Notes: generated from the sequence alone by a model not told the origin. A DNA stretch of 52,933 nt from Ruditapes philippinarum (GCF_026571515.1 NW_026860036.1:248001-300933); one strand, 5' to 3'; positions 10,340-52,322 are shown, counted from the stretch's first letter. A program made the numbers and translations.

Positions 10340-13300
10340 ATGTTTAAACTTGTGTTTTTGTATTGGCTCGTTTTAGTCTTCAAAGATACTATTTTCTCGA
10401 CTAGTAGAGGTTAGTTAACGTTTTTAGTTTTTTGTTTTCATTAAATTTGATAAAATGACGAAAAGTTTCTTTAATTCCAGTGACAGAAAAAAAGGAAAAA
10501 ATCCACGTGATTTAAAAACATAATACGTCCTTTTAGGGATAATAAATAAAGAATAAATCATATCTTACAGTTAAAAGGAGTAAAATAGCCTTCCTATTAC
10601 CGTTAATCTTTATTGGATTGAAAGAAGGAAAATTAAAAAAAAACAATTGAAAGACTGTCGAAAATCTTATTAAGTTTTGCTGCCTTACGCCTAACGTAAA
10701 AGCGCTATAATAAACATGTTATCTACGTAAAATGACAATAGCTCTAATATTCTGGTCCATTTGTAGTTTCAGCTATACCACTATTACCATGTTGTCGTAC
10801 AAACACAACATGTCGTGGCACAGGTCATGATAACCACTTTGATGTGGAATGCGGATTAGGGTATGCTATTGCAATATATAACATAACTGTTGGAACCAAA
10901 AGGATGTCAACAGGATGCCCAAACGCCTGGACTACACCTGTGAATGACTCGTCGTGTTGTGAAACGAATGAAGAAGACTGTATTTTCTTATTTGATTCAA
11001 ATGCAAATCAGATATATCACAACAAAATTAACGGAAATGAGGTTATATCTGGTCTTCCTGTAACAGGGAGTAACACCCCTGCTTCCTGCCAAGGAGGGAC
11101 TAACATATATTACAACTTAACAAACTACATGTACATCAATTATAACTGTATAAATCGTAAGTATTAAAGACCTACCCATATTTACAACAAACTACGTGAA
11201 ACTAAATTACTTTGTATAAATTCCAGTCAGATTTGTTGATTGGCTTAAGTTTTTTGTTGCTTGGTATGCAAACAATTCCGTTTCAGCCTGGAATATTATC
11301 ACAACAAAACAACAAAATTGCTAGGAAAACTGGAAATCGTACTTAACATAGCTTTTTGATTTACTAGAACTACAGATTTAGCCAGGGCTATAGATAAAAA
11401 TGTAAACTCAGCGCGCAGGTTTTAATTTATATATTTATTTTTTTACCATGAGCATACGATATCCTTAAATATTCGCTCTGTTTGAGTTTGAGCTAACGGC
11501 CAAGTTTCCTGATATGAACCATTACTGACTTTTACCAGGAAACGAACTCAAGAGTGGTTGAATGATAAGCTTTCATCACCAATCTGTTTAGTAAATATAT
11601 ATAAACACACGCTCGTATTTATTTAAGCATGTTTACATTAAAGGAACACACATATTTGACATGTTCAGTGACACTGGTGTGAAAGTCGTTGTTGAAGCAG
11701 AAGCCGTGTATATTTGGAGCAAAGACTATCCGAGCGTGATACAGGGAGACATGGATAGAGCGGCTTGTTCTATAGAAATAGATAACTGTGATGCTGGTAT
11801 TGAGATGTTCACATTAGACATATCTCTGTACTCATACAGGTCAGAAAAGTTCATTGAGTTGTCATTATTATCTGATGCTTACCGGAAGTTTTCGATCGAA
11901 ATAACAACATGCTTACTGTATGTGCGAGATCGACAAAAATGAAAAACAAAAACTAAACAAAAAACACAAAAAACATAGTATTATAACTGTCAGTTTCGTA
12001 TGGAAATGACCGAATGTAAACTTAAAGATTTATATTGTTAACCGTTTTTTCACAAGGAAATAACTATATGCAGACTGAAGTTGTATTAAATATGTAAAGA
12101 ACGTAAAGAAGTACGATGTTAATGCACGAAAAAAAGTTGCATTGAACAAAAGTATACGTCTGATTCGGTGATTCCAGAAAGTTCCGTTATATTNNNNNNN
12201 NNNNNNNNNNNNNNNNNNNNNNNNNNNNNNNNNNNNNNNNNNNNNNNNNNNNNNNNNNNNNNNNNNNNNNNNNNNNNNNNNNNNNNNNNNNNNNNNNNNN
12301 NNNNNNNNNNNNNNNNNNNNNNNNNNNNNNNNNNNNNNNNNNNNNNNNNNNNNNNNNNNNNNNNNNNNNNNNNNNNNNNNNNNNNNNNNNNNNNNNNNNN
12401 NNNNNNNNNNNNNNNNNNNNNNNNNNNNNNNNNNNNNNNNNNNNNNNNNNNNNNNNNNNNNNNNNNNNNNNNNNNNNNNNNNNNNNNNNNNNNNNNNNNN
12501 NNNNNNNNNNNNNNNNNNNNNNNNNNNNNNNNNNNNNNNNNNNNNNNNNNNNNNNNNNNNNNNNNNNNNNNNNNNNNNNNNNNNNNNNNNNNNNNNNNNN
12601 NNNNNNNNNNNNNNNNNNNNNNNNNNNNNNNNNNNNNNNNNNNNNNNNNNNNNNNNNNNNNNNNNNNNNNNNNNNNNNNNNNNNNNNNNNNNNNNNNNNN
12701 NNNNNNNNNNNNNNNNNNNNNNNNNNNNNNNNNNNNNNNNNNNNNNNNNNNNNNNNNNNNNNNNNNNNNNNNNNNNNNNTGTATGTCCGTCCGTCCGTCC
12801 ATCTATCTTTAAGCGTATGCATACTTTCAGTTTAAGATAGAAATTTTACTTATCGTACTTTTGAGGTCAAACTAACTACTAGTATATGCTAATGTTCATA
12901 GTATTTTTGATATCAAAACAAGTGTATGCTGACTGTAAGTTTTACATAGTAAATGCTTACTTAACTGATTTCTATGCTTACTGTTAATTTGATATGTAGA
13001 TAACCGTAAAACAACAGTCTCTCCCAGATATTAACAATTCAATTCAAATGTTGTTGCATTTTTTCGGCAAACCTTTGCCTTTGGCAATACATACAAAACA
13101 TACATAAATCACTAGAAATATGACTAACATTCAATACAAATATACAATGTTCACCTAAAATGCAGAAACATATTAAATCTACAATTCTTGCATTGTTTCT
13201 AAAACACTAGATCTTAATGCGAATGATTTATCTAGAAATTTACATAATTGCAATATTCTATTTTTGATCCTATCATGTTTTAGATAATGATAGATATCTA

Positions 13301-16300
13301 TCTATCTATCTAGCCACCTACCTAGCTAGCTAGCTAGCTAGCTAGCTACCTACCTACCTACCTACCTACCTACCTTGTCTTGTCTTGTCTTGTCTGTATG
13401 TCCGTCCGTCCGTCCATCTATCTTTAAGCGTATGCATACTTTCAGTTTAAGATAGAAATTTTACTTATCGTACTTTTGAGGTCAAACTAACTACTAGTAT
13501 ATGCTAATGTTCATAGTATTTTTGATATCAAAACAAGTGTATGCTGACTGTAAGTTTTACATAGTAAATGCTTACTTAACTGATTTCTATGCTTACTGTT
13601 AATTTGATATGTAGATAACCGTAAAACAACAGTCCCTCCCAGATATTAACAATTCAATTCAATTCAAATGTTGTTGCATTTTTTCGGCAAACCTTTGCCT
13701 TTGGCAATACATACAAAACATACATAAATCACTAGAAATATGACTAACATTCAATACAAATATACAATGTTCACATAAAATGCAGAAACATATTAAATCT
13801 ACAATTCTTGCATTGTTTCTAAAACACTAGATCTTAATGCGAATGATTTATCTAGAAATTTACATAATTGCAATATTCTATTTTTGATCCTATCATGTTT
13901 TAGATAATGTCATCACATAATGCCATGTTAGTTATTTAATGTTGGAAAAGATACATGTTTAATTAAAGAGTTTCTCAGTTCTGAATATAAGGGACAACAT
14001 AATAAGAAGTGGTATTCTAATTCACCATTTTTATACTAGCATAATTTACATAATCAGTTATTTCTATCCGTTCTCATATATCTCCCTGTTTCTATTTTAA
14101 GGAATGAGAACATAATATATAACATGATAGTTGTTTACGTAAATTGTCATTCTTTACAATACAAAACTGTGTTTTATATTTATTATAGTAATCAAGCTTT
14201 GGCATAATATCTATACAATCGTACCATTGTTATAAATTGATCTCTTAATCTCTGCTTAAATTCCATTGGACGCGTTTAGCCAAACATTTATCATTCCCAT
14301 TAATGCATTGGTCTAAATATATATATGTTATATAGGCGCCTGCTGACGGTTAACGATTGTATTCTAAAATCGTAAAGCTCTTTCCTTACATAAAACAAAG
14401 GAAATTCACCTAGTTCTTCATAGACAGCAAAATTTGGGGTCTGTCTTTTGACACCTAAAACATATTTATAAAATCTTATCTGTAGTTTTACAAGGTTATA
14501 TATACCCCAAACCTCTGACCCATATAATAAGATTGGAGCTACCATTCTTTCAAACAAGTATAATTTTGTTATAACATCGAATTTAACTCTATCAAAAAGT
14601 GCGAGAAAATTTAGGTAAGTTCTTAGACCTTGATCTGAAAATGTTTTCACAGCTTCAACAAAACTACCTGTGTAAGAAAATTTCACTCCTAAATATGTAA
14701 AACCATCTACATTTTCAACAAATTGACCATTTATAAATATATCAAAATTATGGATTGACTTACGTTTTTCAAATTTTTGATAACATCTATCTTTAGACCA
14801 CATTTATATGAATATTCAAAATCATGATCAACTTGTGTCTGCAGGCTTGCAGGGTCAGTTTTAAACAACACAAAACAACACATCTGCAAAAGTAACAACT
14901 ACTTTTTATAAAATTAACAGTGATAAAAACCACGTGCCTAAGCCCTACTGTAATTTTGAGAGAGTAACAGCCTTGTGCTCAATGTAAAACTTAGATTTTA
15001 ATATCCGAATGCTTTTAAAAGATGGAAATGACCTTATATCATATTTAAATAACGGTATACCTATTGTTAGTTTGGGATCAAATAACCTTACGTTTAAAAT
15101 AAGTTTAAAATTCATTTTAAATTCTAAATTTTTTAACATAACACATTTAATTTGGATTTGATAAAGTAATCTTACTTTCACTTCATTATTTCCAGCAATG
15201 GATCGTGCGAACAGTACTTGAAAATCATGAATGCCGACAACAATACTGTGAATGATTGGAGCTGTTCTGAGAATACCGTTGATGTTGTCTCCGCTATCGT
15301 TCCTAATTACGTCATTATTTACTTCAGTAAGAACAATAAAGACGTAGGTGGGCGATTCTGGATAGGATTCCAACGTGAGTATTTAGTAAATTTCAATAAC
15401 CATAGCAAACAATCATTATATCGAATGAAAATACTGATGTTAATTAACTTTGTTTTGTTATTATGTAATGATAAAAGGCCATATTGAAAACATAGAGCAT
15501 TTTAGAATACGAAAGCAAGCAGTAAACCAGAAGCAATAATGTCTGCCTATCAATATGGGTATCAATCATGGGTTCGAGTCTAAGGATCATTCCCAGAACA
15601 GTATTTATGCCTTTTAACAAGACAAAATATCTGCTGGCAAACTTTTTTAGTTGAATTTTTATTTTGAAAACTTGAATACTTACACAGCGACAACTTCGTC
15701 GAACATCACTGTCAATTGTCCTCCAGAATATCCGACAATGTGTGAGAGAACGACTACTTCAACTTTATCGTCCACAACAACTACTATATCTAGCTCGAGC
15801 GAGTCTTTGAACTACTCAACTTCAACTAACAGTCCACCAGCAGTAATTTCTACATCTCAGACGATTACTACCGATTCAAACTATGGTAAATTGTANNNNN
15901 NNNNNNNNNNNNNNNNNNNNNNNNNNNNNNNNNNNNNNNNNNNNNNNNNNNNNNNNNNNNNNNNNNNNNNNNNNNNNNNNNNNNNNNNNNNNNNNNNNNN
16001 NNNNNNNNNNNNNNNNNNNNNNNNNNNNNNNNNNNNNNCTATCTGATTCGCAGCATCTATCGTGCAGCGGTTAGATAGATAAATAAATTATATAATAATG
16101 CCTGTTCATTTATGCGAGATATAATGCTCATATTTGTGTTTGTGCATTTAGAACAGAATGGTAGATTCTAATGTCTCATCTTTTAACTGCATATAACTAT
16201 ATTGGTAATAATTAATTTATTTCAGACTGGGTGCCAATAGTGATAGGTGTGTTTGCAGGATTAATTTTTATCGTGATAGTAATTCTTATAACTTTGTACT

Positions 16301-18030
16301 CCCGCAACTTCGGAGTTTGTCAACGGCGCAAACAAGTTAAGGTATTTTTACACATTTATACATATATGAATAGTTTTTATAATGTTTGCGTATTTGTAGC
16401 AGTAACCTACGCTTTCTTTGAAATTTACTTTGGAAACTTACATGTAATTCTATAGCGATATATTAAATGTTTATATTTTTGCTAATTTACAAATTGTCAT
16501 AAAATGCGAATTAGTGCTATGTTTTAATATATGTTGCAGAAAGAAATTATTAGAGGAGATGCAAATAATGGCGGAAATAAAAATAAACCTTTACAAACGG
16601 CTGAAATAATATCTGAAGTAGAAAATAAGAAAGCAGCAGACTCAAACCCAGTTCTATGGCCAAACAAAACTACAAAGACTAGACATAATCATGAAGCTAA
16701 ATCAACACGCACAGCACATGATAAAATAGACGAAAGTGTCGCGACAAATAAGAAAGTAAAGTCCAGTAAAAAAAGTAAAATTCAACCAGATGGAAAAAGA
16801 ATAGGAGAAAAGGTTGTCAGTACTAGTGGAAAAAAAGTAAAATCGTCACCAAGAAGTGCTACAACTAACTCCTCACAAAATATACTTGATGTTAATAACA
16901 AGAGAACACATCAACGGAATAATGACCATGTTATTCAAGATGGTGAAAATTGGAAAGGAGAAAATACAGTCACTGCCGATGAAAAGAAAGAAAATTTGCC
17001 AAGATTATCATCTAGAGCTACTATGGACTCGTCAAAGGGCAAAGCATTTCTACATAACAAGAAAACAGGGCAGTTGAATGAAACTCAGATTTTTAAAGGT
17101 GATTCTCATGATCAAAATCCGAACACTAACACCGAACCACTGAGTACAACAGTTGCATCCGAAATATTACCCGGGAATAGCCTATTAATAGTAAAAAATG
17201 ACATAAATATGATTCCAAAAGAAAAAAGGGCACCGGCATCCCCTATTCGAAATGAAACAGCTTTCAATGTAGGCGGATCTAGACCAGAGAGTGCAACTAA
17301 ATCTTACAGAAGGAAGAAAAGAAGTAGTTTACATAGAAATCATTTAAGATATAAGAACACTCCAACCACCAACCAAGAAAGATCGTATCCAAGACCTTAT
17401 CACGATTCATATAGCAGCGAATTTGAAAGTGTGGACGAGAATGATGACGATGATGACATCAAACCGTTAGGTCACGAAAACCGACATCTTCATAAAGTCA
17501 AAGATGCCTTTCTCGTGAGTAAAAACACTAAGGTTTCTCAAAGGTCTGGTCATAAGAAAAAGAGACGTAATAAGATTAGTCCGACACATTTGAGTTTAAA
17601 ACACCGACATCATGCTCAACTCAAGAGTAAACCATTCAGTTTGTTGGATACAGACATAAAAGTTCTGCTTGGTATTATTGACAATTATGATGAAAACAGG
17701 TACTCGACCATGGTAAACAATAGTCAAGGTTTAACAAGATCTGAAGCGATGAATGATTTATCTAGAAAAAGTCGAAGAAAAAGGTCAGTAAATGCAAATG
17801 GTTCTACAGACAAAAACAAAGAATTAGTCGAAAATGATGCGTACAATGATATTACCGATGTTGAAAACAAAGATGATAGTTTGCGAATCGTTAAACCTAC
17901 TACATGTAGAAGCCCACAAATGGCACAAACGGAAAGCTTAAAGACAACATTGGAAGCAGTTCTTAATTCGTCAAAACTAAATCTGAAAAGTAAAAAGAAA
18001 CAAAATAATACTCAAAAAGGTAAACATTAA
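10340..18030 (+). CDS. Gene A: type-I membrane protein, signal peptide + SUEL/rhamnose-binding-lectin-like domain + CUB-like domain + Ser/Thr stalk + TM + ~500-aa basic disordered cytoplasmic tail (about 879 aa)
   Basis: Exons 10340-10409 (MFKLVFLYWLVLVF...), 10767-11156 (Cys-rich, ends YMYINYNCI), 11644-11839 and 15196-15374 (VYIWSKDYP...CSIEI...CEQYLKI...RFWIGF), 15688-15885 (CPP...C + Thr-rich), 16226-16341 (TM WVPIVIGVFAGLIFIVIVILITLY) and 16540-18030. All GT-AG, phases 1,1,2,1,1,0, total 2640 nt in one open frame. Exon-by-exon homology with gene C. An extra exon inside an N gap cannot be excluded. Confidence 0.85.
12194..12779. other. assembly gap (N run)
   Basis: Run of n. Confidence 1.
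12780..13909. repeat. ~510-bp direct duplication (12780-13289 / 13395-13909) separated by a compound microsatellite (ATCT/AGCT/ACCT/CTTGT/GTCC)
   Basis: Two almost identical copies beginning tgtatgtccgtccgtccgtcc, differing at about 3 sites; directly abuts an N gap. Confidence 0.9.
13910..14920 (-). mobile_element. degenerate non-LTR retrotransposon (LINE, RTE-X-like) reverse-transcriptase C-terminal fragment in gene A intron 3
   Basis: ORF 14300-14803 has FTYLGVKF and LFERMVAPILLYGSEVWG, typical LINE RT thumb-region motifs. It is frameshifted and its boundaries are approximate. Confidence 0.8.
15896..16038. other. assembly gap (N run)
   Basis: Run of n. Confidence 1.
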
Positions 18031-18289
18031 ACATTGAAAAGAAGGTGAACAATATTGATGCGGACAATGTGGTGTTTGTCTCTAAATGCTATGATGACGG
18101 TACGATGATTGAAACCGTTTTTACTATAGTACTAAATTACATTTTATTAAACATGACGTTATTTTGTAACAGTTATTTTTTGGCATGGTTAAATAAAGAC
18201 ACAGTACATATATATACATGTACTTGTATCTTTATGTCTCTTTTAGATATATAAAGTGTTGGTGATTGTGATAATAAGCATTCCTTATT

Positions 18290-27349: not shown

Positions 27350-27565
27350 TTTGTTTGTTTTGATTTTACGTCGTACCAACCTATAAAGGACTTATTCCAG
27401 CTTTACTGGTAGAAGAAGATGTCAGGTTCTCCGCTGCGTATTGTTTCAGGCACGAACGAACATGCACCTGTATAGAGACATGCTTGCTGGATGGCTTCCG
27501 TACATGAAAAAAAAAACAAGTCCCTGGCAGGATTCGAACCCACAGCGGTGAGAGGCAAGTGGTGA
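27350..27565 (-). mobile_element. tRNA-derived SINE, 5'-truncated
   Basis: B-box GGTTCGAATCC on the minus strand (about 27531-27541), a body shared with the copy at 34377, and an (AAAC)n tail. Confidence 0.7.
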
Positions 27566-27912
27566 GAATTTGCTAAAAGTTTTGGTGAAGACAAAAACCG
27601 TTGGGTACACATGCTAAAAAGTAAAAAAAAAATATGAATATAAATTTTGAAGTTATGTTTCATTCACGGATTTATGTCAGGTGAAAGGCAGTATTTGATT
27701 TCCATAACAGTGAGTAAATGACTAGAAAAACTAAATACCACATGAACATCATCTATATTCAGTAAATAAGCCAAAGAATTTGTCATCTTTACAGCTAGTT
27801 AATTTGTGACTTGACAGCACCAGATTCGTTCAAGCACACAACATCTTCACACGAAACAACTAGCTAGCAGTAAACATTATTTTCAAAAAATAAAGACCAT
27901 AAACAAATAAAA

Positions 27913-31066: not shown

Positions 31067-31158
31067 AAAACAATATACTTATGAATAAAATGACCCTATT
31101 TGTATATTCTGTTTATATGTAAAGTAATTCGAATAATACTGTTATGATATCATGTTTG

Positions 31159-40100: not shown

Positions 40101-42428
40101 ATATTCTTTTCGTTGAGTGTTTTATACTGTAACAGTACGGGTACGTTTCAGTCATTATCGAAATGTGCCAGGAACGTTATGGTTTTAACCGTAATGTTTC
40201 TCGTAATGGTTAATCATTACGCCTTGAACATTAATTAATCATATCCTGATGATCAACGATAAAACATCAAATTTGAGTATAAACGTAGTATATAAAATGA
40301 AGAAAAACAGAACCCCTAAAGAAAGCCCAACACAACAAAATTGTTAAATGTTGCACGCTCGGTTTGATTGAGCATGTTCATGGAAGGTAATGGAAAAGTG
40401 CTAGATACCGTCCACGTCCCCCAAGCTCCGGCTTAAGCAGAATTCAACATTTTAACACAAAATGGTGAAATTTGAATTTAGAAACATACGCTGATGTGTC
40501 CATACGGTGGAACCTTCAATGTGACACAGAAGTGTCATGTCATGAGAAGCGGCGAATGGTCCCCCAGTAAAATAATGCGTGTGCCCTAAACGAGAAAACA
40601 ATGGGCGGAGCTAAATAAAATGGAATTTTGAAAGGGGATCTGAGGTTATGAAGCCTGCACATCTTTTGACAAGACGTCAAAAGACAAATTTAAAAAGCAC
40701 TACCTATTGGGCTAACCACGGCCGGACGCTACCTGTTGAGCTAATGCATATCGCCGACTTCGTTACAAATAATTGGAAAAAACGTTGCTACCTCATAAAA
40801 GGTATTTCTACTCGAATATTTGCGAATAATATTTTACTTGCTTCCTTTTAGTATTGACATGACTCTAGTACTCTATCTCAATAGCTTAGCGCAGATTCGA
40901 CGTTATTTTTGCAAAATTTTGAAACTTGGCACGGCCTCGTGAACGCCGTAAACAGTTACCCTCGAGCTAGATATTCCCATCTTTACCGGCAGCCGGTGTA
41001 ACATCCTTAATTGTAATCCGCGCAAGACAAGTCGCGTGTTTTAAATGACGTCATTCCCGCGCGCCTTTTATGAATGATTTTCGTTCTTAGAATGACGTCC
41101 TTTTGACGTTATGAATGAAGTTGTAAATTCAAACGCTACTATCAATGGAAATCTTAGTTCTTTCCGAAATGATTTTTCTGCGTAGTATTCAAGATAAAGA
41201 ATCAAACACCGGCTGCCGTAATAGACCGGAATATCTAGCTCTCGCGTAACTGTTTACATACGGTAGTATCGCGGCCCTCAGCCGAGTTTCAGCTGAACAT
41301 TTACCCGAGAGTTAGAAATTTCGGCAGCCGGTGTTTGATACCAAAAGATAAAAAAAAAACTTGAATTTTCTGTTTATTATATACATTTTTCTCTTTTTAT
41401 AATTTGCAATTTGAGAGACTTTCCTATAAATTGTGTGTACTGGCAGAATTTAGAAGAAAGTAGTCAGGCAAGACATCTGTGAAAATACGGAAAGTATGTT
41501 TCACTGAAGTGAAAAATAAATTTTACAGTGAAAGTACGGAAAATAAAATACACATTTAATTTCATCAATATTTTCTCAATATAATGATTTTACATCATTA
41601 TTATATTTATGTACGCCGAACACGGCGATGTGCATCGTCAATAAAAAAAATGAATTATAAATTTTTCAACTGATATTAATAAAACCTGTGGCATTAGTGT
41701 ATTTGAGATGTTATTATAGCATCATATGGAAAGAAAACATAATAAGAATGGAAAATATCAATAGAATGCGTTGTTATTGCTTCCTAAAAGGCTTTGTTAA
41801 CTATCTTATCGCAAGGACAAATAAAACAGTTGCATATACATGTAGCAGTCCCTAACCAGTATTTATTTGCACTTGAAAATCACGAGGGTTTTTAGAATTT
41901 ATTATAATAATACTTGTGTCAGGACGGTTGTAAGGCTAGAAAGAATGTTTTAAACCAGTCTACCTCAAATGTTTAGCCGTTTCTTATAATGCCAAAAATA
42001 TCTGTGGACAACAATTAAAGTTTTTGGGCTTTTTATATTGTCTATTTAAATCAGCTTTACAATAAAACACTGGCAAATTTTTGAAAATGATCATCGACTG
42101 GTTTCTCAACTTACGATCGGGTTGTTCGAATTACGGAATATTTCTTTAACACCAATCTATGATGTTTCATGGTAAACTTCAAGAACATCACCAATATTAG
42201 TCAAAGTTTCGTATCATTATGAGCTTTATAATCCCTCGTGTAATTTTTTATTTTGGGGGTCTTTTAGATCACATTAAGCCACTACTCTCTCGTATTATTA
42301 AACTCTTATTGATATCAATATTTTATAATTTAATAATTTCATATCAACAATTAAACAACAAACTTACCTTGTGCTATAAAAGCGCCAATTGAAACACATA
42401 TTATCGCTAGAAAGTTTAATTTCGTCAT
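31159..42428 (-). CDS. Gene C: type-I membrane protein, signal peptide + SUEL-like lectin domain + CUB-like domain + Thr stalk + TM + tail with multiple LC8-type motifs (about 723 aa); paralogue of gene A
   Basis: Exons 42428-42368 ([20 protein letters not shown]), 39243-38854 (…CNGRQNC…[10 protein letters not shown]), 37434-37236, 36374-36190 (…GACNQTVRI…EWTCS…KVWMGFK), 34211-34017, 33371-33247 ([27 protein letters not shown]) and 32175-31159. GT-AG, phases 1,1,2,1,1,0 (identical to gene A), total 2172 nt in frame. Confidence 0.87.
33360..33660 (-). repeat. about 7 degenerate ~45-bp tandem copies of the splice-acceptor/TM-exon start
   Basis: Recurring minus-strand motif TTTTGTTNCAG|ATGACTAY...AATGAACAT. 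Confidence 0.75.
34377..35279 (-). mobile_element. tRNA-derived SINE interrupted by a MITE
   Basis: The body (caggctttactggcggaagaaga, ggctcgaacc) matches the SINE at 27350. The probable head remnant (ccaacgacctt...cggacgcccc) resumes after 35252. Confidence 0.6.
34576..35249. mobile_element. PIF/Harbinger-type MITE (674 bp)
   Basis: 14-bp TIRs AACCCCTGTCACAC / GTGTGACAGGGCCT (12/14 match) flanked by a TAA target duplication. GC-rich interior with many ACGCCG motifs. Confidence 0.8.
35389..36003. repeat. three copies (35389-35493, 35616-35719, 35900-36003) of a ~104-nt multi-hairpin element; candidate structured RNA
   Basis: Closing stem plus internal hairpins with compensatory substitutions between copies; a fourth copy lies at 40342-40457. 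Confidence 0.7.
36793..37187 (-). mobile_element. complete TRIM (miniature LTR retrotransposon) with a tRNA-like sequence in each LTR (Helenus-type)
   Basis: Two 144-bp LTRs (36793-36936, 37044-37187) bounded by TGTCAC...GTGACA; 4-bp TSD TAAA; PBS TGGCGCCCAACGTGGGGC (tRNA-Lys, 37041-37024); PPT GCAGGGGAGTA; A-box and B-box in each LTR. Confidence 0.93.
40342..40457. repeat. fourth copy of the ~104-nt structured element, in gene C intron 1
   Basis: Homologous to 35389-35493 including flanks (about 40300-40505 vs 35345-35545). Confidence 0.8.
40950..41340. mobile_element. fold-back element with ~45-bp inverted repeats (probable non-autonomous DNA transposon)
   Basis: acagttac...gagctagatattcc...cggcagccggtgt and its inverse acaccggctgccg...ggaatatctagctc...gtaactgt, with a third partial copy at about 41300-41340. 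Confidence 0.5.
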
Positions 42429-43307: not shown

Positions 43308-44299
43308 GCCGGTAGAATAGAAAAAGAAAAAATGACAAAATTATCATCTAGAGCTACTATGCACTCGTCAAAGGGCAAAGCTGATAACAAGGCAGTAAAA
43401 TGAAACTCAGGTTTTTAAGGATGATTCTCTTGCTCAAAATCCGAACACTAACACCGAACCGCTGAGTGCAACAATTGCGTCCGAAATATTACCTGGGCAT
43501 AGCACTGTAATAGTAAAATAGACATAAATGTGAGACCAAAAGAAAAAGGGCACAGACGGCCCCTATTCGGAATGAAGCACCTTTCAGTGTAGGTGGATCC
43601 AGACCAGAGATTACAACTAAATATAACGGAAGCAAGAAAAGAAGTAGCTCACATAAAACTCATTTAAGATATAAGAACTCTCCAACCACCACACAAGAAA
43701 GATCGTATCCAAAACCTTATCACGATTCATATAGCAGCGAATGCAAATGATTACGATAATGACATGAAACCGTTAGGTCATGAAAACCGATGCCTTTCTC
43801 ATGAGTAAAACAACTAAGTTTTCTTAAAGGTGTGGGCATAAAAAAAGAGACGTAATAAGATTATTCCGACACATTTCAGTTTAAGACACCGACATCATGC
43901 ACAACTCAAGAGTGAATCATTTAGTTTATTGGAAAGAGACATAAAATATCTGCTTTGTATAATTGACAATTATGATGAAAACAGGTACTCGACGATGATA
44001 AATAATGGCCATGGTTTAACAAGATCTAAAGCGATGAATAATTTATCTAGAAAAAGACGAAAAAGAAAGGGTCAGTAAAAACAAATGCTTCTACAGACAA
44101 AAACAATGATATAGTGAGAAATGATGCGTACAATGATAATTCTGATGTTGAAAACACAGTTGATAGTTTGCGAATTGTTAACCCTACTACACGAAGAAGG
44201 CCTCAAATGGCACAAACGGAAAGCTTGAAGACAACATTGGAAGCAGTTCTTAATTCATCAAAAGTAAAAAGAAACAAATAATACTCAAAAAGGTAAACA
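43308..44299 (+). pseudogene. pseudogenised copy of the 3' two-thirds of gene A's cytoplasmic-tail exon
   Basis: Aligns to about 16975-18027 but carries frameshifting indels and stops; no ORF of 60 aa or more in the track; no upstream exons. Confidence 0.9.
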
Positions 44300-46307
44300 A
44301 TGCTATTATGACAGTACGATGATGGAAACCGTTTTTACTATAGTACTAAATTACATTTTATTAAACATGACGTTATTTTGTAACAGTTATTAATTGGCAT
44401 GATTAAATAAAGCCACATTGCATATATATATATACATGTACATGTATCCTTATGTCACTTTTAGATATAAAAAGTGATAATAAGCATTCCTTATATTTTG
44501 TTTGTTTGTTTCATTCGTAATGTCTTTTTCTACAGGAGTCATTGTATCATTACCTATTGTTAAGGTTTTTTAGCAAGAATAAAAATTAGTTATAAAGAGT
44601 ATTATGCTCGTTATACGATCGAACGTTATAAAACATTATTGTAAGCAGTGGGAAGTACTAAGATTCGTTAATAGTCGTAAAAGTAGGACGTCCTATTATA
44701 ATCTCAATCGCTATGCCTCGCCTATTTTGACTCAGGAGATTAAAAGAGTGTAGTGACTTTTGTGTGTTTTTTTCCGCTGTATCAAAATTCTTCTTGATTT
44801 AAAAATAAACACAACTTTTCCCGATTACCGAAAAAAAATAATAATAGAAAAGTGGAACATTAAGTCCCAGTAAAAACGTTTGAGGGAGAGGCATTTGATC
44901 ACGGGTCAAAATATATTATAAAACGACTGTGTGATGATCAAATAAAATCATAAACAAATAACACTTCTATGTCCCTATGAAAGCCGTGCTCCATAACAAT
45001 GCAAATTAACTTTATATCGTTTTTATTTTTTAATGAATTTTCATTAACATTCGATGCAAATGTCTTTGTTTTTACAATTAGAATAGGCCTTCAACTAATA
45101 AAGGTAAAATTAAGTAAAAAATAAAAACAGGCGTAAAATAAAATGCACACCAATAGACATTTAGTACGCGTTATCTGAACTAGATAAAATAGCACCTCAA
45201 TTACCAATGTATTGAACATAAATATTAGATATATTGAAGAATTCTTTCTATTAAAATTAATGTTGGATCAGAACAACAATCTCTTAAAACAAAACATTGC
45301 CATTGACGAGTGTTCTATTCATACAACCAAATCATGATTATCAACGATCATTTATTTAGACAAAAACAAGAGATATTGTTCAACATTTAGTAGGGAGTGT
45401 GAACTATTTCTTTTAGATTGGTATAGATAATTCCAAACTGTCACATTGTTTAACGTTTATCCCGACTTTTCTGATTACTCATACCAACCTGCGATTATGA
45501 ATGCAAGGAGTGTAAGATGTGTTTTTTCAATGATGATACCGTATCCTTTACAGTGCCTCTCTCATTCAGAAATGGTGTGTCCATCATTAGCTATTCGCTA
45601 TTGTAAATAATGCGTAAAGCGTTGTTACAGTTCGGCACATCCATATAACACTTAGCAAAGAATATGAACAAATCATTCAAGAACAAATACGATATAGAAA
45701 TGAATGCTGGCATAGTTTAACTGTATATACGTATGTTAACAAATAAAACAATATTTGGACATTCTTTTGTGAACGCTTATATAACAAAGAACATTTCAAA
45801 TTTTGTTAACCTAATTGTATTGCCCTTTGTCACCTTCTCAAAATTTCTATTATCCAATATTAAATTGTTATTGTAAATTCATTATTTTAAAATACAGCCT
45901 AAAATAGTTTGTTTCAAATATTAACATGCAATTTTATGTCTATTTTTTGTAAAGATACACCAAAAACTTAACTGTAGATGGGCAAAAAATGTGTCATTTT
46001 TGCGATGTTTTATGAAACTTGAGCAGTATTTTTTCAAATCGATGGACATATTAAAGCATTAGAATTAGGGGATACAATTTTATTTGATAAATTGAAGCTT
46101 TATTTTAACAACATGTTTAGTTATAATTGTACATGTAAAACAATGTTTTTGATAAATAGATATTCGTTTATTTACTGATTTTAACATAAATGTCAGTTCG
46201 CCTTATTTGTAATAAAAATTACAAACACTAGTGTCTGTGGAATGGTGATTCATTTCTTTAGTTATAACAATTATAAATTTCACTTAAATAAATGTTAAGA
46301 TAAGATG

Positions 46308-46497
46308 ATATCAAATAAATGTATCACCAATTCTGATATTAAAATGGCGAAGTCGTTTAGAAAAATTATGGCAAGAAAAACACTAAAAATAAAAGCAAAC
46401 TCAAAAAAGAAATGGTTTCTGCCAAAACCTGAACTCAAGTTTCAAAGTGAACCGTACAGTAGTTTGTATTCTTGACTGTCACATTTTGAAACTTGAT
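46308..46497 (+). pseudogene. remnant of the last ~60 codons of gene B
   Basis: Aligns to 26165-26352 (…KPELKFQSEPYSSLYS…); the rest of the gene is deleted. Confidence 0.9.
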
Positions 46498-48086
46498 ATG
46501 TATTGATAAGTACGGTTGAATCTTTTTTGAAACATCCGTAAACTGAGAATTATTTATGTATTGTATTAATGGTATTAATTTGAAAATGAAAAGAAGAGTT
46601 GAGGCCATTTAATTTTTTTTTGTTATTGCGAGTGTGTTAGGATTTATTGAAGTATACCAACAAAATATTATTTCGTAAACAAATTTACATTATTAAGTAG
46701 ATTTTAATACTATTAATGACGAAGAATTTGGTATCAGTCACAAAACCGTTTAATTATATAATGAAGCGTATAAAAATGTAATTGTAAACGTTAACCAACA
46801 AAACTGACACCAAATGACATTTATTTTGTTAGACATGACGTCAAGATAATCTTATTGCAATATGTTTCAATGTATAGTTAGGGAACCGACCGAAATGCAA
46901 TTTCTAACTCAGTTTTAATGTCATATGACTCAAATCTTATTTAAGTTATCAATATCCTATTGAAAAACATAAAATTAAAACTTGCATTATTCCCCTTAAC
47001 CATTATCACGCTAAATATCTTAAAAGGACTTGTCCAACTTACAATCTAAACAAAATCATTCATCATTTCTATTGATATTTTTAAAAATAAGTTTTACAGA
47101 GCAGCTAACACTGTGGAACCATAACATTTACATGACATTTACAGTTTTTCATTTTTATTCATTACCGACAATATTCAGGAAGTAGAATTAACAGCGTTTT
47201 CTTTACGTGTTTGATAGTGTTAATTTCTTTGTCTTTCATCAGAATATACCTATTAAATTTCACCAGGTATAGTGACCAAAGAGACGACGACAAAAATCAA
47301 CGCTTTTTTTTTTGAAACTGAAATCGTGAATTTATGAAGTTGAATCCGTGAAGATACAATGCCATCACCCATTATATCGTAGGAAATCGTAAATCATACA
47401 TTTTGTCTATTGGTATCATAACATGGATCTTTTTGCTAACTACCACTGGAAATACCTGCCTATATCCACATTGTTTCCTCTGTCTAATGTTTCTTTTCCA
47501 AACCTCACATCGATAAGGGTGTTTCCCCTTTCTGTCCATCATGGTTGACTCTTTATTTACACAATGACTTCCTCATAATTTCAGGGGGGAAAAAATAAAT
47601 ACAGACGATGTATACATTTGACGTAAATTTATAAGCTGTTCTTTTTGTTGAACTTATTTAATGAAAGGTCATGTTTAATGTGTGCATGCAAACAGAAAAA
47701 CAATCAACAACAATCAAAAACCCTAATATTGATATATCGATTGGGAACATTTTTTTGTTTGATAACGCTTAAGCATTTTTCATAACCTTCGTTTATATTC
47801 TTCACTAAAATAACAGCTTAATTTCGATACCAAATACAAAACAACATAGTTAAACAAGTGAAAATACATGCATGATGTGCATCTCAATATACGTTTGTCA
47901 TTTTACAAAATTGACCACGAATCATAAATCCGAAATCATTTTGATAAATAAAACGATATGTTTATGAATAAAATGCCCATATTTGATATTCTGTTTATGT
48001 GTAGTACGTGCAATGTAGTTTGTATGATACTGCTATGATATCATGTTTTAGCAATGTGAATCTTTTCGTTTCTTTACTCGTTTCTT

Positions 48087-48123
<37 letters not shown>

Positions 48124-51100
48124 GATTGACGTCTTATCATATGTAGCAGCTTTTCCTCATTCTTTTCTTGAGTAAAGAAAGCACTAGCCATCACGCTACG
48201 GACTTTATAAACATGTTTAATCTCCTTCCCAACCGTTGGGCTAAATGGCCTTACATGAATTGGGCGAACTTCCTTACTATACGTATCCGGACTTTCATTA
48301 TCAGTATTATCGTTTTGATAATTGTCTGCAACCGTTTCTGGTTGAGACATTTCCGGTTCCGGTTTATTTACTTCCTTTTCCGGTGTAAACAAAAATCTTC
48401 TAATTGCAGGAGAGTCTTTGATTGTATCTACACTGGTTATATCTAGAGTATCAGGAGATATATTACGAATGTCACGTACATCGTCACTTTTTGGAATCTT
48501 TTTCTTTTTCCTTGTCTTCCTTTTGTGCTTATGTTTGCTGATAATTTCATTTTCCAATTTGATTGCAGCCTCTTCATCTTCATCTACAAATGCTTGAATA
48601 TTTCCATTAGCCACAGGCTTGATTGGTGTTTTGTCAGGGACAATTGTGGATTGTTTAACTTCTTCTTGTTTTGTATCTTCTCGATGGATAGTATCAGTCT
48701 GACTGCTTGTAGTTTGAACATTTTTCTTTGTTTTGATATTTGCTTGACTCTTCTGACATTTTGTCTTAATCATGTCTGTTTGACATTGTTCATTATACTT
48801 TATAATTGCTTCAGTTGATACACCTTTATCTTTATTCTTTAATGGTGGTACTTCAGTTTGAGTTGACTTTTCTTCAGACATCATTAAATCAGTTAATATG
48901 TCTGATTCCGTTAAGGTTACTTGGCAGCCTATCTCAGCCCTCGAAATACGAATTTCGTTTATTTCAGAATTGACGTTAGGTTCAGTCAGATCTTTTGTTT
49001 CCATAGCAGGGTGTAGTTGTACCTGGCACGCAAAGTCTTTGAAAGTTGGACGAGCGGGCAGTTCTGGTACGGATACCATGACTGGCTGTTGCAGGGATGG
49101 TTTATTCTCCGCGGGAACCTATAATGGGGTTAAAGCACACTTTTATTTCTCAAAAAACAACAACAAATTTATATTCCTTTCTACTTATGGTTGTTGCTCT
49201 GTTTACAAAACAAGGATTGACAACTCCATGTGTGATATTTTTCGTGTAATACAAACTTTACTTCCCTTTTAGATTAACCAGTATTGTAAAAAGCATTGCT
49301 GCGTGTAGATTTGATAAAATAAAGAATAACATAAACATTAAAGATTAATAGATATAGATTAAAGAAATCAATACTTGTGACTAGGAAGTAAAGCAGTGGC
49401 TAATGAACGCTCACGCAGACGACATCGATTAAATAAAATTATGATCGTGGAATGAGGAAGAATACTTTAAATTATTTATGGACTCCGATTAAATTTGTTC
49501 GATTAAATTTAGATGGAATTTAAAAAATATATATGTATGTGCATTCAACATGCAGTTTCAAATTACAACCCTTTCTCCTTATTTTCATTGCTTAACCATT
49601 TAAATTACCTTTAATAGAAAGTAAATTGTAAATATGTAATGTTTTTTATTCAGAAACATTAAACGGTACAATGGTAATTGATCGTATTGTCACCTTAGTG
49701 CATTAACGGATTAAGTCATTTTAAATTCAATAGGAGTAAGCCAGTTATATTGCCTTAAAATTATTAAACAGAACAGAACAGAACATCGTTTTATTTAGAC
49801 TTGTACATAGTACATCGTCATGCATATAGATAAATAAAACAATTATCACGTCACGTGATCATGGTAACACAAAGTACAATGTGATACTTAGAATATATAA
49901 TAGAATGTACAGTGTTATGAGTAATAAGTAAATATTTTCTCAATCATAGCAGTAATAGAAATTCTACTGGCAACCTCACAGGATATTGTATACCATATTT
50001 TACCCAGTGAGTCTAACCATCCCACTGAAAGTAAAACTCCCTCCCGATAAAGGCGAAGGATAGATGTTAACCAGCAGCAAAACTAAATACTTATTGAGCA
50101 GTTTAATTCTTTCTAGATAGAGAACAGTATCATTAAAAGTTATACATGTTAACACACACATATCATATGATAATGTATCAAATAAGAGAAAATACCTTTA
50201 TTATTTAAGAACAATGCATGATTACACAAACAAACATGATGTTATAATATATGAGAATTGTAAAAAAATATTTTCCAAGAGGATGTTAAAAAATCAAATA
50301 TTTAAGAGAGTATTTCTTATTGCCAAACTTTCTTTAATGTATCTTGCTAAATTCATCAATAAAAGCTAGTTTGAAGTTTGCAATAACTGAATAAATTTGA
50401 ACATCGATGGTCTAACATAAAAATATTTTTTTATATATGTCTTACGAATATTATTATAACAAGGACAAACCAGAACAAAATGATATTCATCTTCGATATC
50501 AAGGGTATTACAGCACTGACAATATCTCTCGTTTCGTGGTAATCTATGTCTACTATATCTACCAGTTTGTATTCTGAGAGAATGGGCTGATAGTCTTATT
50601 TTGGTAATATACATTCTTAAACTACGTGGTAAAAGGTCGAGGTAAATTTCATACGATAAATTAGTTTTGCAATTTTTATATAGATCTAAAACATTATTAT
50701 TTTCAATATTACCATGCCAATCTTGTAAATAATTATCAATAAGTCTTTGTTTAAATATTCTAGGAAATAATTTACCATCAACATTATCACTATTTATAAA
50801 ACAATCAGCAAAGCCAAATGTATACAATAATCGTTTAACATTTGAGACCCAGTTATTATATCCATGTTCACAATCAATAACACTTTGTTCATAAACTTTT
50901 TTCATAATTATATTATCAGTTTGGATTGTTTTACACCAAAACTTGATTACTTTAACAAAACGAGCAATATATAATGGCCATCTTCCTAATTAAACACGTT
51001 AAATTTCAAGAAGGAAATCGTTTTTCTATTTAAATTGCTTAAAGGGTATAAATCTACATCATATGAAATTTTTTTTTTTAAATTTATCAACAGTAAAATT

Positions 51101-52322
51101 ATATTGGTTCCACTATTATATGATTGATTCCCGAATAAAAAAGTTATAACATAGAATGTCTCTATTATTTAATGCACATGAATAATGTACGTAAACAGAA
51201 TAAAATGTTCCGGAACAAAATATTATTTTGCTCTTTTAAGAAGGGTTTTATCCATTTAGAAATAATTTGGTTCATGCGCCATTCGCTTTTAAGCCAATAT
51301 ACATGTATTACCATATTAATAATACAAGCATTTTGGTAATATACTTTTTAAGAATTTCAAGCAATAAGTTTTGTATCAGAAAAATAGCTTTACACACATT
51401 AACTTATTTTTAATAAATAGAGCAGCTGTAGTGACCCATTGTTAACATTGATTGATTGACTACAATTCGTAGGTTGCGAGTTCGATCATCAGCTACTCAA
51501 ACTAGAAACTATCAAGTCTTTCAGATTAGAATTAAAAAATATAGGTTACTATGACGACTATATATTTACGCATATTTCACACAATACCCTCTGGAACCCT
51601 TTAATTATAATACAGACTTAGTATACATTTTTTATCCAATGATATTACTGATAGAAAATTTAAAAAAAAAACATTTTAAGAAAATATGAAATCCAAGAGC
51701 TAATATCTGATCATCTAGATAGTATATTAAATAAAACACTTTTTATTTGCTTAGTTACGAATGGATTTTCTTATGATATACGATTTGGTACTATTTACCT
51801 TTTCTATGTCATTGCTGCTTTTAATACGACATGTTCTGAACAGGCAACATGATAATATCATAACAACAATCAACAGTATGGCCGACAACACTCCCAGAGC
51901 AATCACTACAGCCAAGTAGTCATCTGGAAAATATACAACAAAAAAAAAACAGATTTCATGATGTTCATTGCCAAGTAATCATTTGGAACAAAGACAGATG
52001 TCATCAACGTAGTTGTGGCGGCAGAAATGAAACAAACAATGGACAAAAATACCCCCCAAAAACAACAGTAAATCGATACCTTTTTCATCAGAATTGTCTT
52101 CTGCTGTTGTTACATTGTGTGTATCTGTTGACGTTATTATAGTAGTAGTAGTTGTGGTTGTTGATGTCGAAGGTTCTGTCGTTGTTGTTGATGTCATATT
52201 CTCAGTGGTTGTAGATATGGTTACCGTGGTAACATTCATTGTTGTACTGGTGGTTGTCGTTTGCATGCAGTATTGTTGTGTTGAAGGCGGACAGCTGATA
52301 GTGATGTTAGAATTCTGTGTAG
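48087..52322 (-). CDS. Gene D: recent paralogue of gene C; last three exons (stalk, TM, tail); 5' exons expected beyond the window
   Basis: Exons 52322-52080, 51923-51799 and 49118-48087 with conserved splice sites and phases; open frame, alignable to gene C throughout. The C-terminus is altered by an A32 tract. Confidence 0.83.
49771..50986 (-). mobile_element. 5'-truncated non-LTR retrotransposon (RTE-X-like) in gene D intron
   Basis: ORF 50366-50905 with LRIQTGRY...CQCC...IEDEYHFVLVC (LINE C-terminal CCHC region), AATAAA plus a (GTTCT)n tail, TSD T(T/A)ATTAAACA (49761-70 / 50987-96), and an empty site at 32821-32830. Confidence 0.9.
51043..51398. mobile_element. TTAA-flanked MITE (Kolobok/piggyBac-type target site)
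   Basis: TTAA on both sides, degenerate 14-bp TIRs (10/14 match), and a single-TTAA empty site in the gene C paralogue at about 32872. Confidence 0.65.

What the first reader, a model, noticed from the sequence alone, without database searches (positions are those of the whole stretch)
10340..52322. Cluster of uncharacterised SUEL-like + CUB-like + mucin-stalk single-pass receptors with a shared ectodomain plan but unrelated signalling tails
Seen in sequence: genes A and C have the same 7-exon layout, identical intron phases (1,1,2,1,1,0), an identical 390-nt exon 2 and alignable Cys patterns, yet their ectodomains are highly diverged and their large last exons (tails) are not alignable by eye. 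B has the same SP/stalk/TM/tail frame with a third tail type, and D duplicates C. Established: SUEL/RBL and CUB folds mediate glycan and protein recognition. Inference: this is a fast-evolving, tandemly clustered receptor family with variable outputs (LC8 array, ITIM-like, polybasic), as expected of an invertebrate immune, allorecognition or gamete-recognition locus. I do not recognise it as a named family.
Basis: partly seen in the sequence, partly recalled or inferred. Interest (0 to 1): 0.85.

Follow-up and report, generated by a model that had tools for sequence, protein, structure and literature searches.

The report
Clam lectin-like/CUB membrane receptor gene cluster
This stretch of the Manila clam genome holds a tandemly duplicated cluster of genes for single-pass membrane glycoproteins (a diverged sugar-binding-type domain, a CUB domain, a mucin stalk and a long disordered tail). 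They belong to an unstudied family found across molluscs, and what they do and where they are expressed is still unknown.

Summary
Genes A (10340-18030, +) and C (42428-31159, -) each have seven GT-AG exons with intron phases 1,1,2,1,1,0 and a 390-nt exon 2. Both assembly gaps fall in introns of A. The organism is Ruditapes philippinarum. RefSeq already models A exactly this way (XP_060606346.1, "uncharacterized"), splits C into two partial loci, and models D as a 5'-truncated copy.

The domain guesses are supported. An AlphaFold model of the Mercenaria orthologue (pLDDT 81.6) matches 22 CUB structures (Z 9.2-11.9) and SUEL/rhamnose-lectin structures (Z 6.7-7.0). Profile-profile and weak Pfam hits agree, but no Pfam threshold is met.

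At least 143 clusters (50% identity) carry the exon-2 domain, and all 30 looked up are molluscan (28 named, from bivalves, gastropods and a chiton; 2 unnamed). None has a described function.

The locus is a repeated unit [A-tail piece, B, C-like], with further copies on contig C12080. Several copies are broken or truncated.

"Fast-evolving" is only partly right. dN/dS between the intact copies C and E is 0.15-0.55 for exons 2-7, but exon 2 of C versus E has dS 1.13 against 0.11-0.30 elsewhere, so the genes are mosaics.

The tails do not align, yet the C/D/E tails are enriched in QT[D/E] motifs of the LC8-docking type. The complex prediction gave weak support only.

Four RNA-seq runs showed no reads on C exons.

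The immune or gamete role is untested. The scan has noted similar lectin/CUB clusters elsewhere in this genome.

The parts
10340..10409 (+). Gene A exon 1 (ATG plus signal peptide). The donor is at 10409 as in RefSeq; 10403 is an alternative in the same phase.
10767..11156 (+). Gene A exon 2, 390 nt, phase 1-1. Diverged SUEL-like domain that has lost the CNGxxxC cysteine pair.
11644..11839 (+). Gene A exon 3, N-terminal half of the CUB domain (phase 1 in, 2 out).
12194..12779 (.). Assembly gap inside intron 3 of gene A. Not filled.
15196..15374 (+). Gene A exon 4, C-terminal half of the CUB domain.
15688..15885 (+). Gene A exon 5: conserved N-I-T-V-x-C-P-P...C start, then a Ser/Thr-rich stalk (52% S+T).
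15896..16038 (.). Assembly gap that begins 10 nt after the exon 5 donor, so it lies in intron 5 of A. Not filled.
16226..16341 (+). Gene A exon 6, transmembrane segment.
16540..18030 (+). Gene A exon 7: 496-aa basic tail (19% K+R, three polybasic runs) with no detectable relatives.
21854..21914 (+). Gene B exon 1 (signal peptide, 61 nt, phase 1).
23175..23777 (+). Gene B stalk exon, 50% Ser+Thr, phase 1-1.
24047..24147 (+). Gene B transmembrane exon, conserved in Mercenaria LOC123552542.
25153..26352 (+). Gene B tail exon. Conserved islands include a juxtamembrane G-T-Q-T-D and a C-terminal S-L-Y-S-R-L. The acceptor at 25153 is supported by the alignment to Mercenaria.
42368..42428 (-). Gene C exon 1 (signal peptide, 61 nt).
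38854..39243 (-). Gene C exon 2, 390 nt, SUEL-like domain (Pfam SUEL_Lectin E 0.0033, below the cut-off).
37236..37434 (-). Gene C exon 3, N-terminal half of the CUB domain.
36190..36374 (-). Gene C exon 4, C-terminal half of the CUB domain. RefSeq does not annotate it.
34017..34211 (-). Gene C exon 5, stalk. RefSeq does not annotate it.
33247..33371 (-). Gene C exon 6, transmembrane segment.
31159..32175 (-). Gene C exon 7: 338-aa tail with three QT[D/E] motifs and a polybasic run.
43323..44299 (+). Fragment copy of the 3' part of the A tail exon (83% nt identity). A pseudogene piece.
46305..46754 (+). Fragment copy of the 3' end of the B tail exon and its flank (83% nt identity).
52080..52322 (-). 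Gene D exon 5 (stalk). Everything upstream of it is lost to a repeat and the contig end.
51799..51923 (-). Gene D exon 6 (transmembrane), 96% nt identity to C.
48087..49118 (-). Gene D exon 7 (tail). It has a canonical K-S-T-Q-T-E motif and ends in a poly-Lys run encoded by an A32 tract.
52365..52933 (.). High-copy interspersed repeat (more than 1200 first-look candidates, 96-98% identity) that runs to the contig end and cuts off gene D.

Best explanation
The region is a tandemly duplicated cluster of Manila clam genes for type I membrane glycoproteins of an unstudied, mollusc-wide family.

Shown:
- Each full gene (A, C, and E on contig C12080) encodes a signal peptide, a diverged SUEL/rhamnose-binding-lectin-like domain (one phase 1-1 exon), a CUB domain (two exons, together a phase 1-1 cassette), a short Cys-containing linker, an O-glycosylation-type Ser/Thr stalk, one transmembrane helix and a 340-500-aa low-complexity cytoplasmic tail.
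- B is a related frame without the lectin and CUB cassettes, and has its own conserved orthologue in Mercenaria.
- The cluster arose by repeated duplication of a unit [A-tail piece, B, C-like gene].
- The copies exchange sequence. Exon 2 of C and E is about as diverged as between clam genera, while the rest of the gene is about 90% identical.
- Several copies are broken or truncated.

Inferred:
- The lectin-like plus CUB head, held above the membrane on the stalk, binds an extracellular glycan or protein ligand.
- The disordered tail acts through short linear motifs. In the C/D/E type these are arrays of QT[D/E] sites that could dock dimeric LC8 (DYNLL) and so pair or traffic the receptors.
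- The ligand, tissue and biological role are unknown.
For: - Gene models: both are in frame with canonical splice sites and identical phases.
- Independent RefSeq models: P0002 is A with all six junctions. P0150 is C exons 1-3. P0162 is C exons 6-7. P0164 is D exons 5-7.
- CUB fold: Z 9.2-11.9, 105-117 residues aligned at rmsd 2.2-3.2 A, to 22 CUB entries. The model is of the Mercenaria orthologue (pLDDT 81.6), to which C exons 3 and 4 are 62% and 56% identical.
- SUEL fold: Z 6.7-7.0 to SUL-I, three latrophilin lectin-domain entries and CSL3. hhalign against three bona fide clam SUEL domains gave E 2.2e-4 over 82 columns with cysteines in register. Nine of 119 family members hit Pfam SUEL_Lectin (best E 4e-5) and 2 of 119 hit CUB. 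ESM Atlas leads agree.
- Family range: 143 representatives at E 1e-3 or better. All 30 looked up are molluscan (28 named, 2 unnamed).
- Cluster layout.
- Constraint: dN/dS 0.15-0.55 for exons 2-7 of C versus E.
- Tails: B has conserved islands against Mercenaria. QT[D/E] occurs 3-5 times against 0.23-0.29 expected in the C, D, E and Mactra tails.
- LC8 complex: score 0.55 against a best control of 0.02, which the tool rates as weak support. Runs agree in at least 61% of contacts and partner pLDDT is at least 45.
Against: - No Pfam model reaches its gathering score on any window exon, and no solved structure is found by sequence.
- The SUEL match, at Z about 7, is in the range the tool calls middling.
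- By the hhalign register, the YGR, DPC and KYL motifs that I recall as sugar-binding hallmarks are altered, so glycan binding is not assured. A has also lost a cysteine pair.
- Four RNA-seq runs (two studies, 4-12% of each read) gave essentially no depth on C exons 3-7.
- RefSeq splits C and leaves its exons 4-5 unannotated. No RefSeq protein for B turned up in the one search run.
- The LC8 pass is weak and may only reflect remembered LC8-peptide complexes.
- Contig C12080 could be a very diverged alternative haplotype rather than extra copies.
Confidence: 0.7

Rival explanations
1. One reading: a fast-evolving immune, allorecognition or gamete-recognition receptor locus. Diversifying selection acts on the ectodomain, and paralogues carry different signalling outputs (LC8 array, ITIM-like, polybasic).
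For: - Tandem amplification with copy loss.
- Exon 2 is far more diverged than the rest of the gene between C and E: 59% against 89% aa identity.
- Tails differ between paralogue types.
- Other family members carry Tyr-motif tails.
- Another first-reader note reports a lectin/CUB cluster with inhibitory-type versus ITAM-type tails elsewhere in this genome (not checked).
Against: - dN/dS on exon 2 is 0.29 and its dS is 1.13, which points to old divergence under purifying selection rather than rapid adaptive change.
- The ITIM-like count in B is not above chance.
- There is no expression or tissue evidence.
- The family is ancient in molluscs.
- No literature links it to immunity or fertilisation.
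Confidence: 0.2
2. The genes encode structural, non-signalling cell-surface mucins or adhesion molecules. The head and stalk contribute to the glycocalyx or cell-matrix adhesion, and the tails serve only sorting or endocytosis.
For: - Ser/Thr-rich stalks, 200 aa long in B.
- Weak Pfam resemblance of the stalk and TM region to sialomucins MGC-24 and TMEM154.
- Automatic names such as 'mucin-like'.
- The tails have no recognisable catalytic or adaptor domain.
Against: - Long tails of 340-500 aa are retained, with conserved islands and an enriched motif array. This is more than sorting signals usually need.
- The stalks of A and C are short, about 50 aa.
Confidence: 0.25
3. Much of the cluster is decaying. 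C, D, F and the A and B fragments would be pseudogenes or unexpressed relics, leaving only A (and perhaps E) functional.
For: - No RNA reads on C exons in four runs.
- RefSeq splits C into two partial loci.
- D is cut by a repeat and the contig end.
- F has a frameshift in exon 4 and garbled sequence in exon 3.
- The A-tail and B-tail fragments.
- C versus F dN/dS is about 1 on exons 2 and 4.
Against: - All seven C exons and all seven E exons are open with canonical splice sites.
- C versus E dN/dS is 0.15-0.55 for exons 2-7.
- The F defects lie in a stretch that looks like assembly error.
- RNA sampling was shallow and the tissues are unknown.
Confidence: 0.2

Closest known systems
SUEL / rhamnose-binding lectin domains (sea urchin SUL-I, fish CSL3, latrophilin Lec domain; Pfam PF02140)
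   Same: - Same fold by structure search (Z 6.7-7.0, 83-94 residues aligned).
- Cysteines are in register in a profile-profile alignment.
- The C-terminal signature of the type C-x-G...[KR]-Y-[LM]-x-[IV]-x-Y-x-C is kept in C, E and F.
   Different: - About 45 residues longer, with an inserted CC...DC segment.
- Below the Pfam cut-off (18.2 against 31.4 bits).
- The YGR motif is replaced by V-G-S-K and D-P-C by D-A-S-C.
- A lacks one cysteine pair.
- Sugar binding is untested.
Single-pass CUB-domain receptors (Kremen1/2, neuropilins, CDCP1, DCBLD2/ESDN, Neto)
   Same: - A membrane-proximal CUB domain on a type I protein. Kremen and neuropilin CUB domains are among the best structural matches (Z 10.8-11.9).
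- The tails are non-catalytic.
   Different: - No kringle, WSC, discoidin, LCCL or LDLa domains.
- CUB is paired with a SUEL-like domain and a mucin stalk.
- No sequence-level orthology. The family is molluscan in all 30 proteins looked up.
EVA-1 / EVA1C and other SUEL-domain membrane proteins (recalled from memory, not tested)
   Same: Single-pass membrane proteins whose ectodomain carries SUEL-type lectin domains.
   Different: EVA-1 has two SUEL domains and no CUB or mucin stalk. No sequence match appeared in any search here.
Multivalent LC8 (DYNLL) clients with arrays of TQT-type motifs in disordered regions (for example ASCIZ and Nup159; motif consensus recalled from memory)
   Same: - Three to five QT[D/E] sites in a disordered tail. 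One in D and E (K-S-T-Q-T-E) fits the consensus fully.
- The array is conserved in a Mactra orthologue although the rest of the tail does not align.
- The clam has 15 or more DYNLL copies.
   Different: - Most sites have Cys, Ser or Tyr instead of Thr, Val or Ile before the Gln.
- Binding is predicted only weakly (0.55 against 0.02).
- Membrane receptors with such arrays are not a described class as far as I know.

Membership tests
SUEL/RBL lectin domain (Pfam PF02140) | Score at or above the Pfam gathering cut-off (31.4 bits) | tested here: not met
   C exon 2 scores 18.2 bits (E 0.0033) and A exon 2 gives no hit. Nine of 119 family members hit below the cut-off level, best E 4.1e-5.
SUEL/RBL lectin domain (Pfam PF02140) | The alpha/beta lectin fold of solved SUEL/RBL domains | tested here: met
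   Residues 29-154 of the model match 5h4s, 8djg, 6vhh, 6ska and 2zx0 at Z 6.7-7.0 with 83-94 residues aligned. These are the top hits for this domain. The Z is middling by the tool's own note.
SUEL/RBL lectin domain (Pfam PF02140) | Conserved cysteine framework in register | tested here: met
   hhalign of A1 against three bona fide clam SUEL domains gives E 2.2e-4 and probability 45% over 82 columns, spanning template positions 2-85 with cysteines aligned. A lacks the CNGxxxC pair.
SUEL/RBL lectin domain (Pfam PF02140) | YGR, DPC and KYL sequence motifs (recalled as the carbohydrate-site hallmarks) | tested here: not met
   In the hhalign register, YGR corresponds to V-G-S-K, DPC to A-S-C and KYL to R-Y-M in C. 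In A the last is N-Y-M.
SUEL/RBL lectin domain (Pfam PF02140) | Binding of rhamnose or galactose | not testable with these tools
   Needs a glycan array or sugar-inhibition assay on the recombinant domain.
CUB domain (Pfam PF00431) | Score at or above the Pfam gathering cut-off | tested here: not met
   No CUB hit on the exon pieces or on full-length P0002 and P0003. Two of 119 members hit weakly, best E 0.002.
CUB domain (Pfam PF00431) | CUB beta-sandwich fold covering the whole domain | tested here: met
   Residues 156-284 match 22 different CUB entries at Z 9.2-11.9 with 105-117 residues aligned at rmsd 2.2-3.2 A. Foldseek gives probability 0.98-1.00 for MASP, C1r/C1s and Kremen (0.93 for cubilin).
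CUB domain (Pfam PF00431) | Ca2+-binding acidic site of ligand-binding CUB domains | not tested
   No residue-level structural alignment was available.
LC8/DYNLL-binding clients | TQT-type anchor motif in a disordered region | tested here: met
   D and E have K-S-T-Q-T-E and B has G-T-Q-T-D. C has only the variants C-Q-T-D, S-Q-T-D and Y-Q-T-D. QT[D/E] is enriched, p 0.0016 or lower in shuffles.
LC8/DYNLL-binding clients | Physical binding to the LC8 dimer | tested here: inconclusive
   Complex prediction scored 0.55 against a best control of 0.02, verdict 'weak support'. Runs agree in at least 61% of contacts and partner pLDDT is at least 45. That mark was reached by 51 of 78 solved complexes and 2 of 108 mismatched pairs, but at 0.60 or under by only 5 of the 78.

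The most novel reading that the evidence does not exclude
These are members of a mollusc-specific recognition-receptor family. The lectin-like exon would be kept as old, deeply diverged cassettes (C versus E exon 2 is as diverged as between clam genera), while gene conversion homogenises the rest of the gene. Arrays of LC8-docking motifs in the tail would pair or move the receptors after ligand binding. That combination would be a new way of building a diversified surface receptor and a new kind of receptor-to-dynein-light-chain coupling.
Probability: 0.15. Interest if true: 0.75.

Novelty: new variant of a known kind. Interest (0 to 1): 0.45.

Why it matters
Bivalves rely on expanded families of lectin-type recognition proteins. 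This family is present from chitons to clams in many copies, yet standard domain annotation misses it and nobody has described it. Its architecture is now defined: a SUEL-like domain, a CUB domain, a mucin stalk, a TM segment and a motif-bearing disordered tail. One locus is shown to have a mosaic history. Together these give concrete reagents and hypotheses (glycan ligands, LC8 docking, exon-2 diversity) for work on clam immunity, symbiosis or fertilisation. It also flags RefSeq models that are probably split (C) or misnamed (D is labelled a kinase).

Tried and rejected
- Sequence searches of exon 2 (single sequence and 4-sequence profile) against solved structures gave only chance hits.
- A first AlphaFold run on exon 2 with a 4-sequence alignment was useless (pLDDT 40). 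I did not search with it.
- Read laying on 31501-37500 with four RNA-seq runs gave no reads on C exons and no splice joints, only heavy coverage of intronic repeats. The intended test of C introns 3-6 therefore failed. This is not evidence of silence, because the tissues are unknown and only 4-12% of each run was read. The 20 contig-type runs listed by the look-up of sequencing runs look like low-coverage DNA and I did not use them.
- Pfam on ten flanking and intronic ORFs found nothing useful.
- Three literature searches for the architecture and one for the LOC identifiers found no description of the family.
- BLASTP of the A, B and C tails against all 159 fetched proteins found no tail homologues beyond self.
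- Complex prediction of clam LC8 (two copies) with D tail residues 60-110 gave 'weak support' only (0.55 against 0.02). I treat it as a lead, not as evidence of binding.
- I considered that D and F might be the two halves of one gene split between contigs. I rejected this because they overlap in exons 5-6 at only 80-84% identity.
Full-length work used database proteins returned by the searches (P0002, P0003). Joining was done only inside a script, to check frames.
Full report
**What is there**

The window is contig C8523:248001-300933 of a 1.4-Gb assembly. The contig ends where the window ends. Exact protein look-ups identify the organism as the Manila clam, Ruditapes philippinarum.

I rebuilt the gene models from open frames and GT-AG sites.
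- Gene A (+) has seven exons from 10340 to 18030.
- Gene C (-) has seven exons from 42428 to 31159.
- Both translate without internal stops, to about 878 and 723 aa. Both have intron phases 1,1,2,1,1,0 and an exon 2 of exactly 390 nt.
- Gene B (+, 21854-26352) has four exons (signal peptide, 603-nt Ser/Thr stalk, TM, tail) with phases 1,1,0 and no lectin or CUB exon.
- Gene D (-) keeps only exons 5-7 (52322-48087). Upstream of it, a repeat with more than 1200 first-look candidates in the genome runs to the contig end.

**The gaps**

- Gap 12194-12779 lies in intron 3 of A.
- Gap 15896-16038 starts 10 nt after a good GTAAAT donor of exon 5, so it lies in intron 5.
- The gap-free gene C has no exon at either corresponding place. 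The RefSeq protein of A joins straight across both gaps.
Whether anything non-coding is hidden there is unknown.

**Independent gene models**

A profile of four exon-2 domains (alignment A1) searched against 1.84 billion representatives returned the clam's own RefSeq proteins.
- P0002 (XP_060606346.1, LOC132758675, "uncharacterized", 879 aa) is identical to my model of A. The one difference is the exon-1 donor, 10409 instead of 10403, in the same phase.
- C is annotated as two partial loci. P0150 (217 aa) is exons 1-3. P0162 (393 aa) is an alternative start plus exons 6-7. Exons 4 and 5 are left unannotated.
- D is P0164 (exons 5-7), with a spurious kinase name.
- Every junction of the seven-exon plan therefore has a RefSeq counterpart in at least one copy.
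- No protein identical to B appeared in the one search I ran.
- I could not learn how much RNA evidence stands behind these models.

**Domains**

Pfam recognises almost nothing. C exon 2 gives SUEL_Lectin at E 0.0033, below the cut-off. A gives nothing, and full-length P0002 gives nothing.

I folded the 400-aa Mercenaria orthologue P0003 with a 119-sequence family alignment (mean pLDDT 81.6, both ectodomains above 90). C is 48%, 62% and 56% identical to it in exons 2, 3 and 4. A is 31%, 34% and 36% identical.

An all-against-representatives structure search split the model cleanly.
- Residues 156-284 match 22 different CUB entries (Kremen, neuropilin, C1s, PCPE-1, TSG-6, MASP, cubilin, spermadhesin, enteropeptidase, Neto2) at Z 9.2-11.9, with 105-117 residues aligned.
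- Residues 29-154 match five SUEL/rhamnose-lectin entries (SUL-I, three latrophilin lectin-domain entries, CSL3) at Z 6.7-7.0.
- Foldseek gives probability 0.98-1.00 for the MASP, C1r/C1s and Kremen CUB proteins and 0.93 for cubilin.

For a sequence-based check I took three bona fide SUEL domains from the clam's own genome (alignment A3). hhalign against A1 gave E 2.2e-4 over 82 columns, spanning the whole SUEL domain with cysteines in register.
- In that register the classical YGR and DPC motifs are not kept.
- The C-terminal [KR]-Y-[LM]...Y-x-C block is kept in C, E and F.
- A has also lost the CNGxxxC pair.
- That these motifs mark the sugar site is my recollection, not a test.

Neither domain is a Pfam-grade member, and sugar binding is open.

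**The family**

- 143 representatives (clusters at 50% identity) match at E 1e-3 or better.
- All 30 I looked up are molluscan. Of these, 28 carry names: bivalves of many orders, the gastropods Haliotis, Lottia, Nucella and Gigantopelta, and the chiton Liolophura. Two are unnamed.
- The names are "uncharacterized", automatic "mucin-like", or UniRef "CUB domain-containing" and "SUEL-type lectin domain-containing".
- Some members carry two or three tandem lectin-CUB modules (P0004, P0005). This fits the phase 1-1 cassette structure.
- One 726-aa member sits on a 3.2-kb Logan contig with no introns, so it is probably a transcript.
- Four literature searches found no description.

**Cluster history**

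- Self-comparison shows that 16987-34216 is repeated at 43323-52327 at 75-90% identity with deletions. This leaves a piece of the A tail (43323-44299), a piece of the B tail (46305-46754) and D.
- Contig C12080 (76.7 kb) carries the same unit in the opposite orientation. It holds an intact C-like gene E, a B-like copy without a tail exon, another A-tail piece, and a C-like gene F cut by the contig end.
- F has a frameshift in exon 4 and stuttered sequence in exon 3, which may be assembly error.
- I cannot exclude that C12080 is a very diverged haplotype of the C-to-D part of the window.

**Selection and mosaicism**

- Between C and E, dN/dS is 0.15-0.55 for exons 2-7 (1.56 on the 20-codon exon 1, which rests on 6 changes).
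- dS is 1.13 for exon 2 against 0.11-0.30 for the other exons, and the introns flanking exon 2 do not align at all.
- At the protein level, exon 2 of C and E is 59% identical, close to their 48-54% identity to Mercenaria. Exons 3-4 are 89% identical.
- The genes are therefore mosaics. Either an old exon-2 block sits in a recently duplicated backbone, or the backbone has been homogenised by gene conversion.
- This is not fast evolution in the sense of positive selection, though it is compatible with maintenance of distinct lectin-domain types.

**Tails**

- The A, B and C tails show no significant pairwise similarity.
- They are not featureless. B is 40% identical to its Mercenaria orthologue P0161, with sharply conserved islands: the TM segment, G-T-Q-T-D...R-P-L-P-P-I-D, R-H-V-T-F, and the C-terminal F-Q-S-E-P-Y...S-L-Y-S-R-L.
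- The C, D and E tails hold 3-4 QT[D/E] motifs against 0.23-0.29 expected (p 0.0016 or lower). A Mactra orthologue whose tail does not otherwise align holds 5.
- D and E contain K-S-T-Q-T-E, which fits the LC8 consensus as I recall it.
- The clam genome has at least 15 intronless LC8 genes.
- A complex prediction of two LC8 copies with D tail residues 60-110 scored 0.55 against a best control of 0.02. The tool's verdict was "weak support". Runs agreed in at least 61% of contacts and partner pLDDT was at least 45. That mark was reached by 51 of 78 solved complexes and 2 of 108 mismatched pairs, but rarely by true pairs at 0.60 or below, and the result may come from memory of solved LC8-peptide complexes.
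- The ITIM-like count in B (2 against 0.55 expected, p 0.11) is not above chance, though one site is conserved.

**Expression**

Four RNA-seq runs of this species (two studies, 4-12% of each read) put essentially no reads on C exons 3-7. They covered intronic repeats heavily. The tissues are coded and unknown, so this is weak negative evidence only.

**Verdict**

- The locus is best described as a partly decayed tandem array of an old, unstudied molluscan family of lectin-like/CUB membrane glycoproteins.
- The functional reading (immune, allorecognition or gamete receptor with distinct signalling outputs) remains a hypothesis.
- Two other first-reader notes report lectin/CUB receptor clusters on other pieces of this genome. 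I did not check them.

Noticed in passing
window 1-3501: GC-rich (51-57%) 170-bp satellite with 20.7 copies at 98% identity. Its long overlapping ORFs are an artefact of the repeat.
   Followed up: no
window 18376-19759: Tandem array of a 145-bp unit (9.6 copies, 78% matches) just downstream of gene A.
   Followed up: no
window 35339-36000: Intronic repeat copies in gene C are covered about 1300-3300-fold (35301-35900) in two RNA-seq runs, with many inverted and back-joints. This is a highly expressed repeat family elsewhere in the genome, not gene C expression.
   Followed up: partly
It has moderate RNA coverage.
   Followed up: partly
window 52365-52933: Interspersed repeat with more than 1200 first-look candidates at 96-98% identity across the genome, so a young element. 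It ends the contig and truncates gene D.
   Followed up: partly
G000 contigs C1882, C9411, C13971 (e.g. L016:1498-1764:-): At least 15 intronless, full-length dynein light chain LC8 (DYNLL) genes in three tandem clusters. This is an unusual expansion of a normally low-copy gene.
   Followed up: partly
window 12780-13909: A 515-bp tandem duplication (98.6% identical) directly after the assembly gap in intron 3 of A. The assembly here may be unreliable.
   Followed up: no
window 48091-48122: A T32 tract on the plus strand turns the C-terminus of the gene D tail into a run of lysines and replaces the ending seen in C and E.
   Followed up: no
G000:C12080:73470-73570 and 74198-74386: In gene F, exon 3 shows base-stutter (each base doubled or tripled relative to C), and exon 4 is 4 nt longer than in C and frameshifted. 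This is either a pseudogene or long-read assembly error.
   Followed up: partly
window 14300-14803 (-) and 50366-50905 (-): ORFs that look like fragments of retrotransposon proteins lie inside intron 3 of A and inside intron 6 of D (between its tail and TM exons). Pfam gave no hit at E 0.01.
   Followed up: partly
window 48087-52322 (RefSeq P0164): RefSeq names gene D 'probable serine/threonine-protein kinase DDB_G0275165'. It has no kinase domain, so the name is probably a low-complexity artefact.
   Followed up: partly
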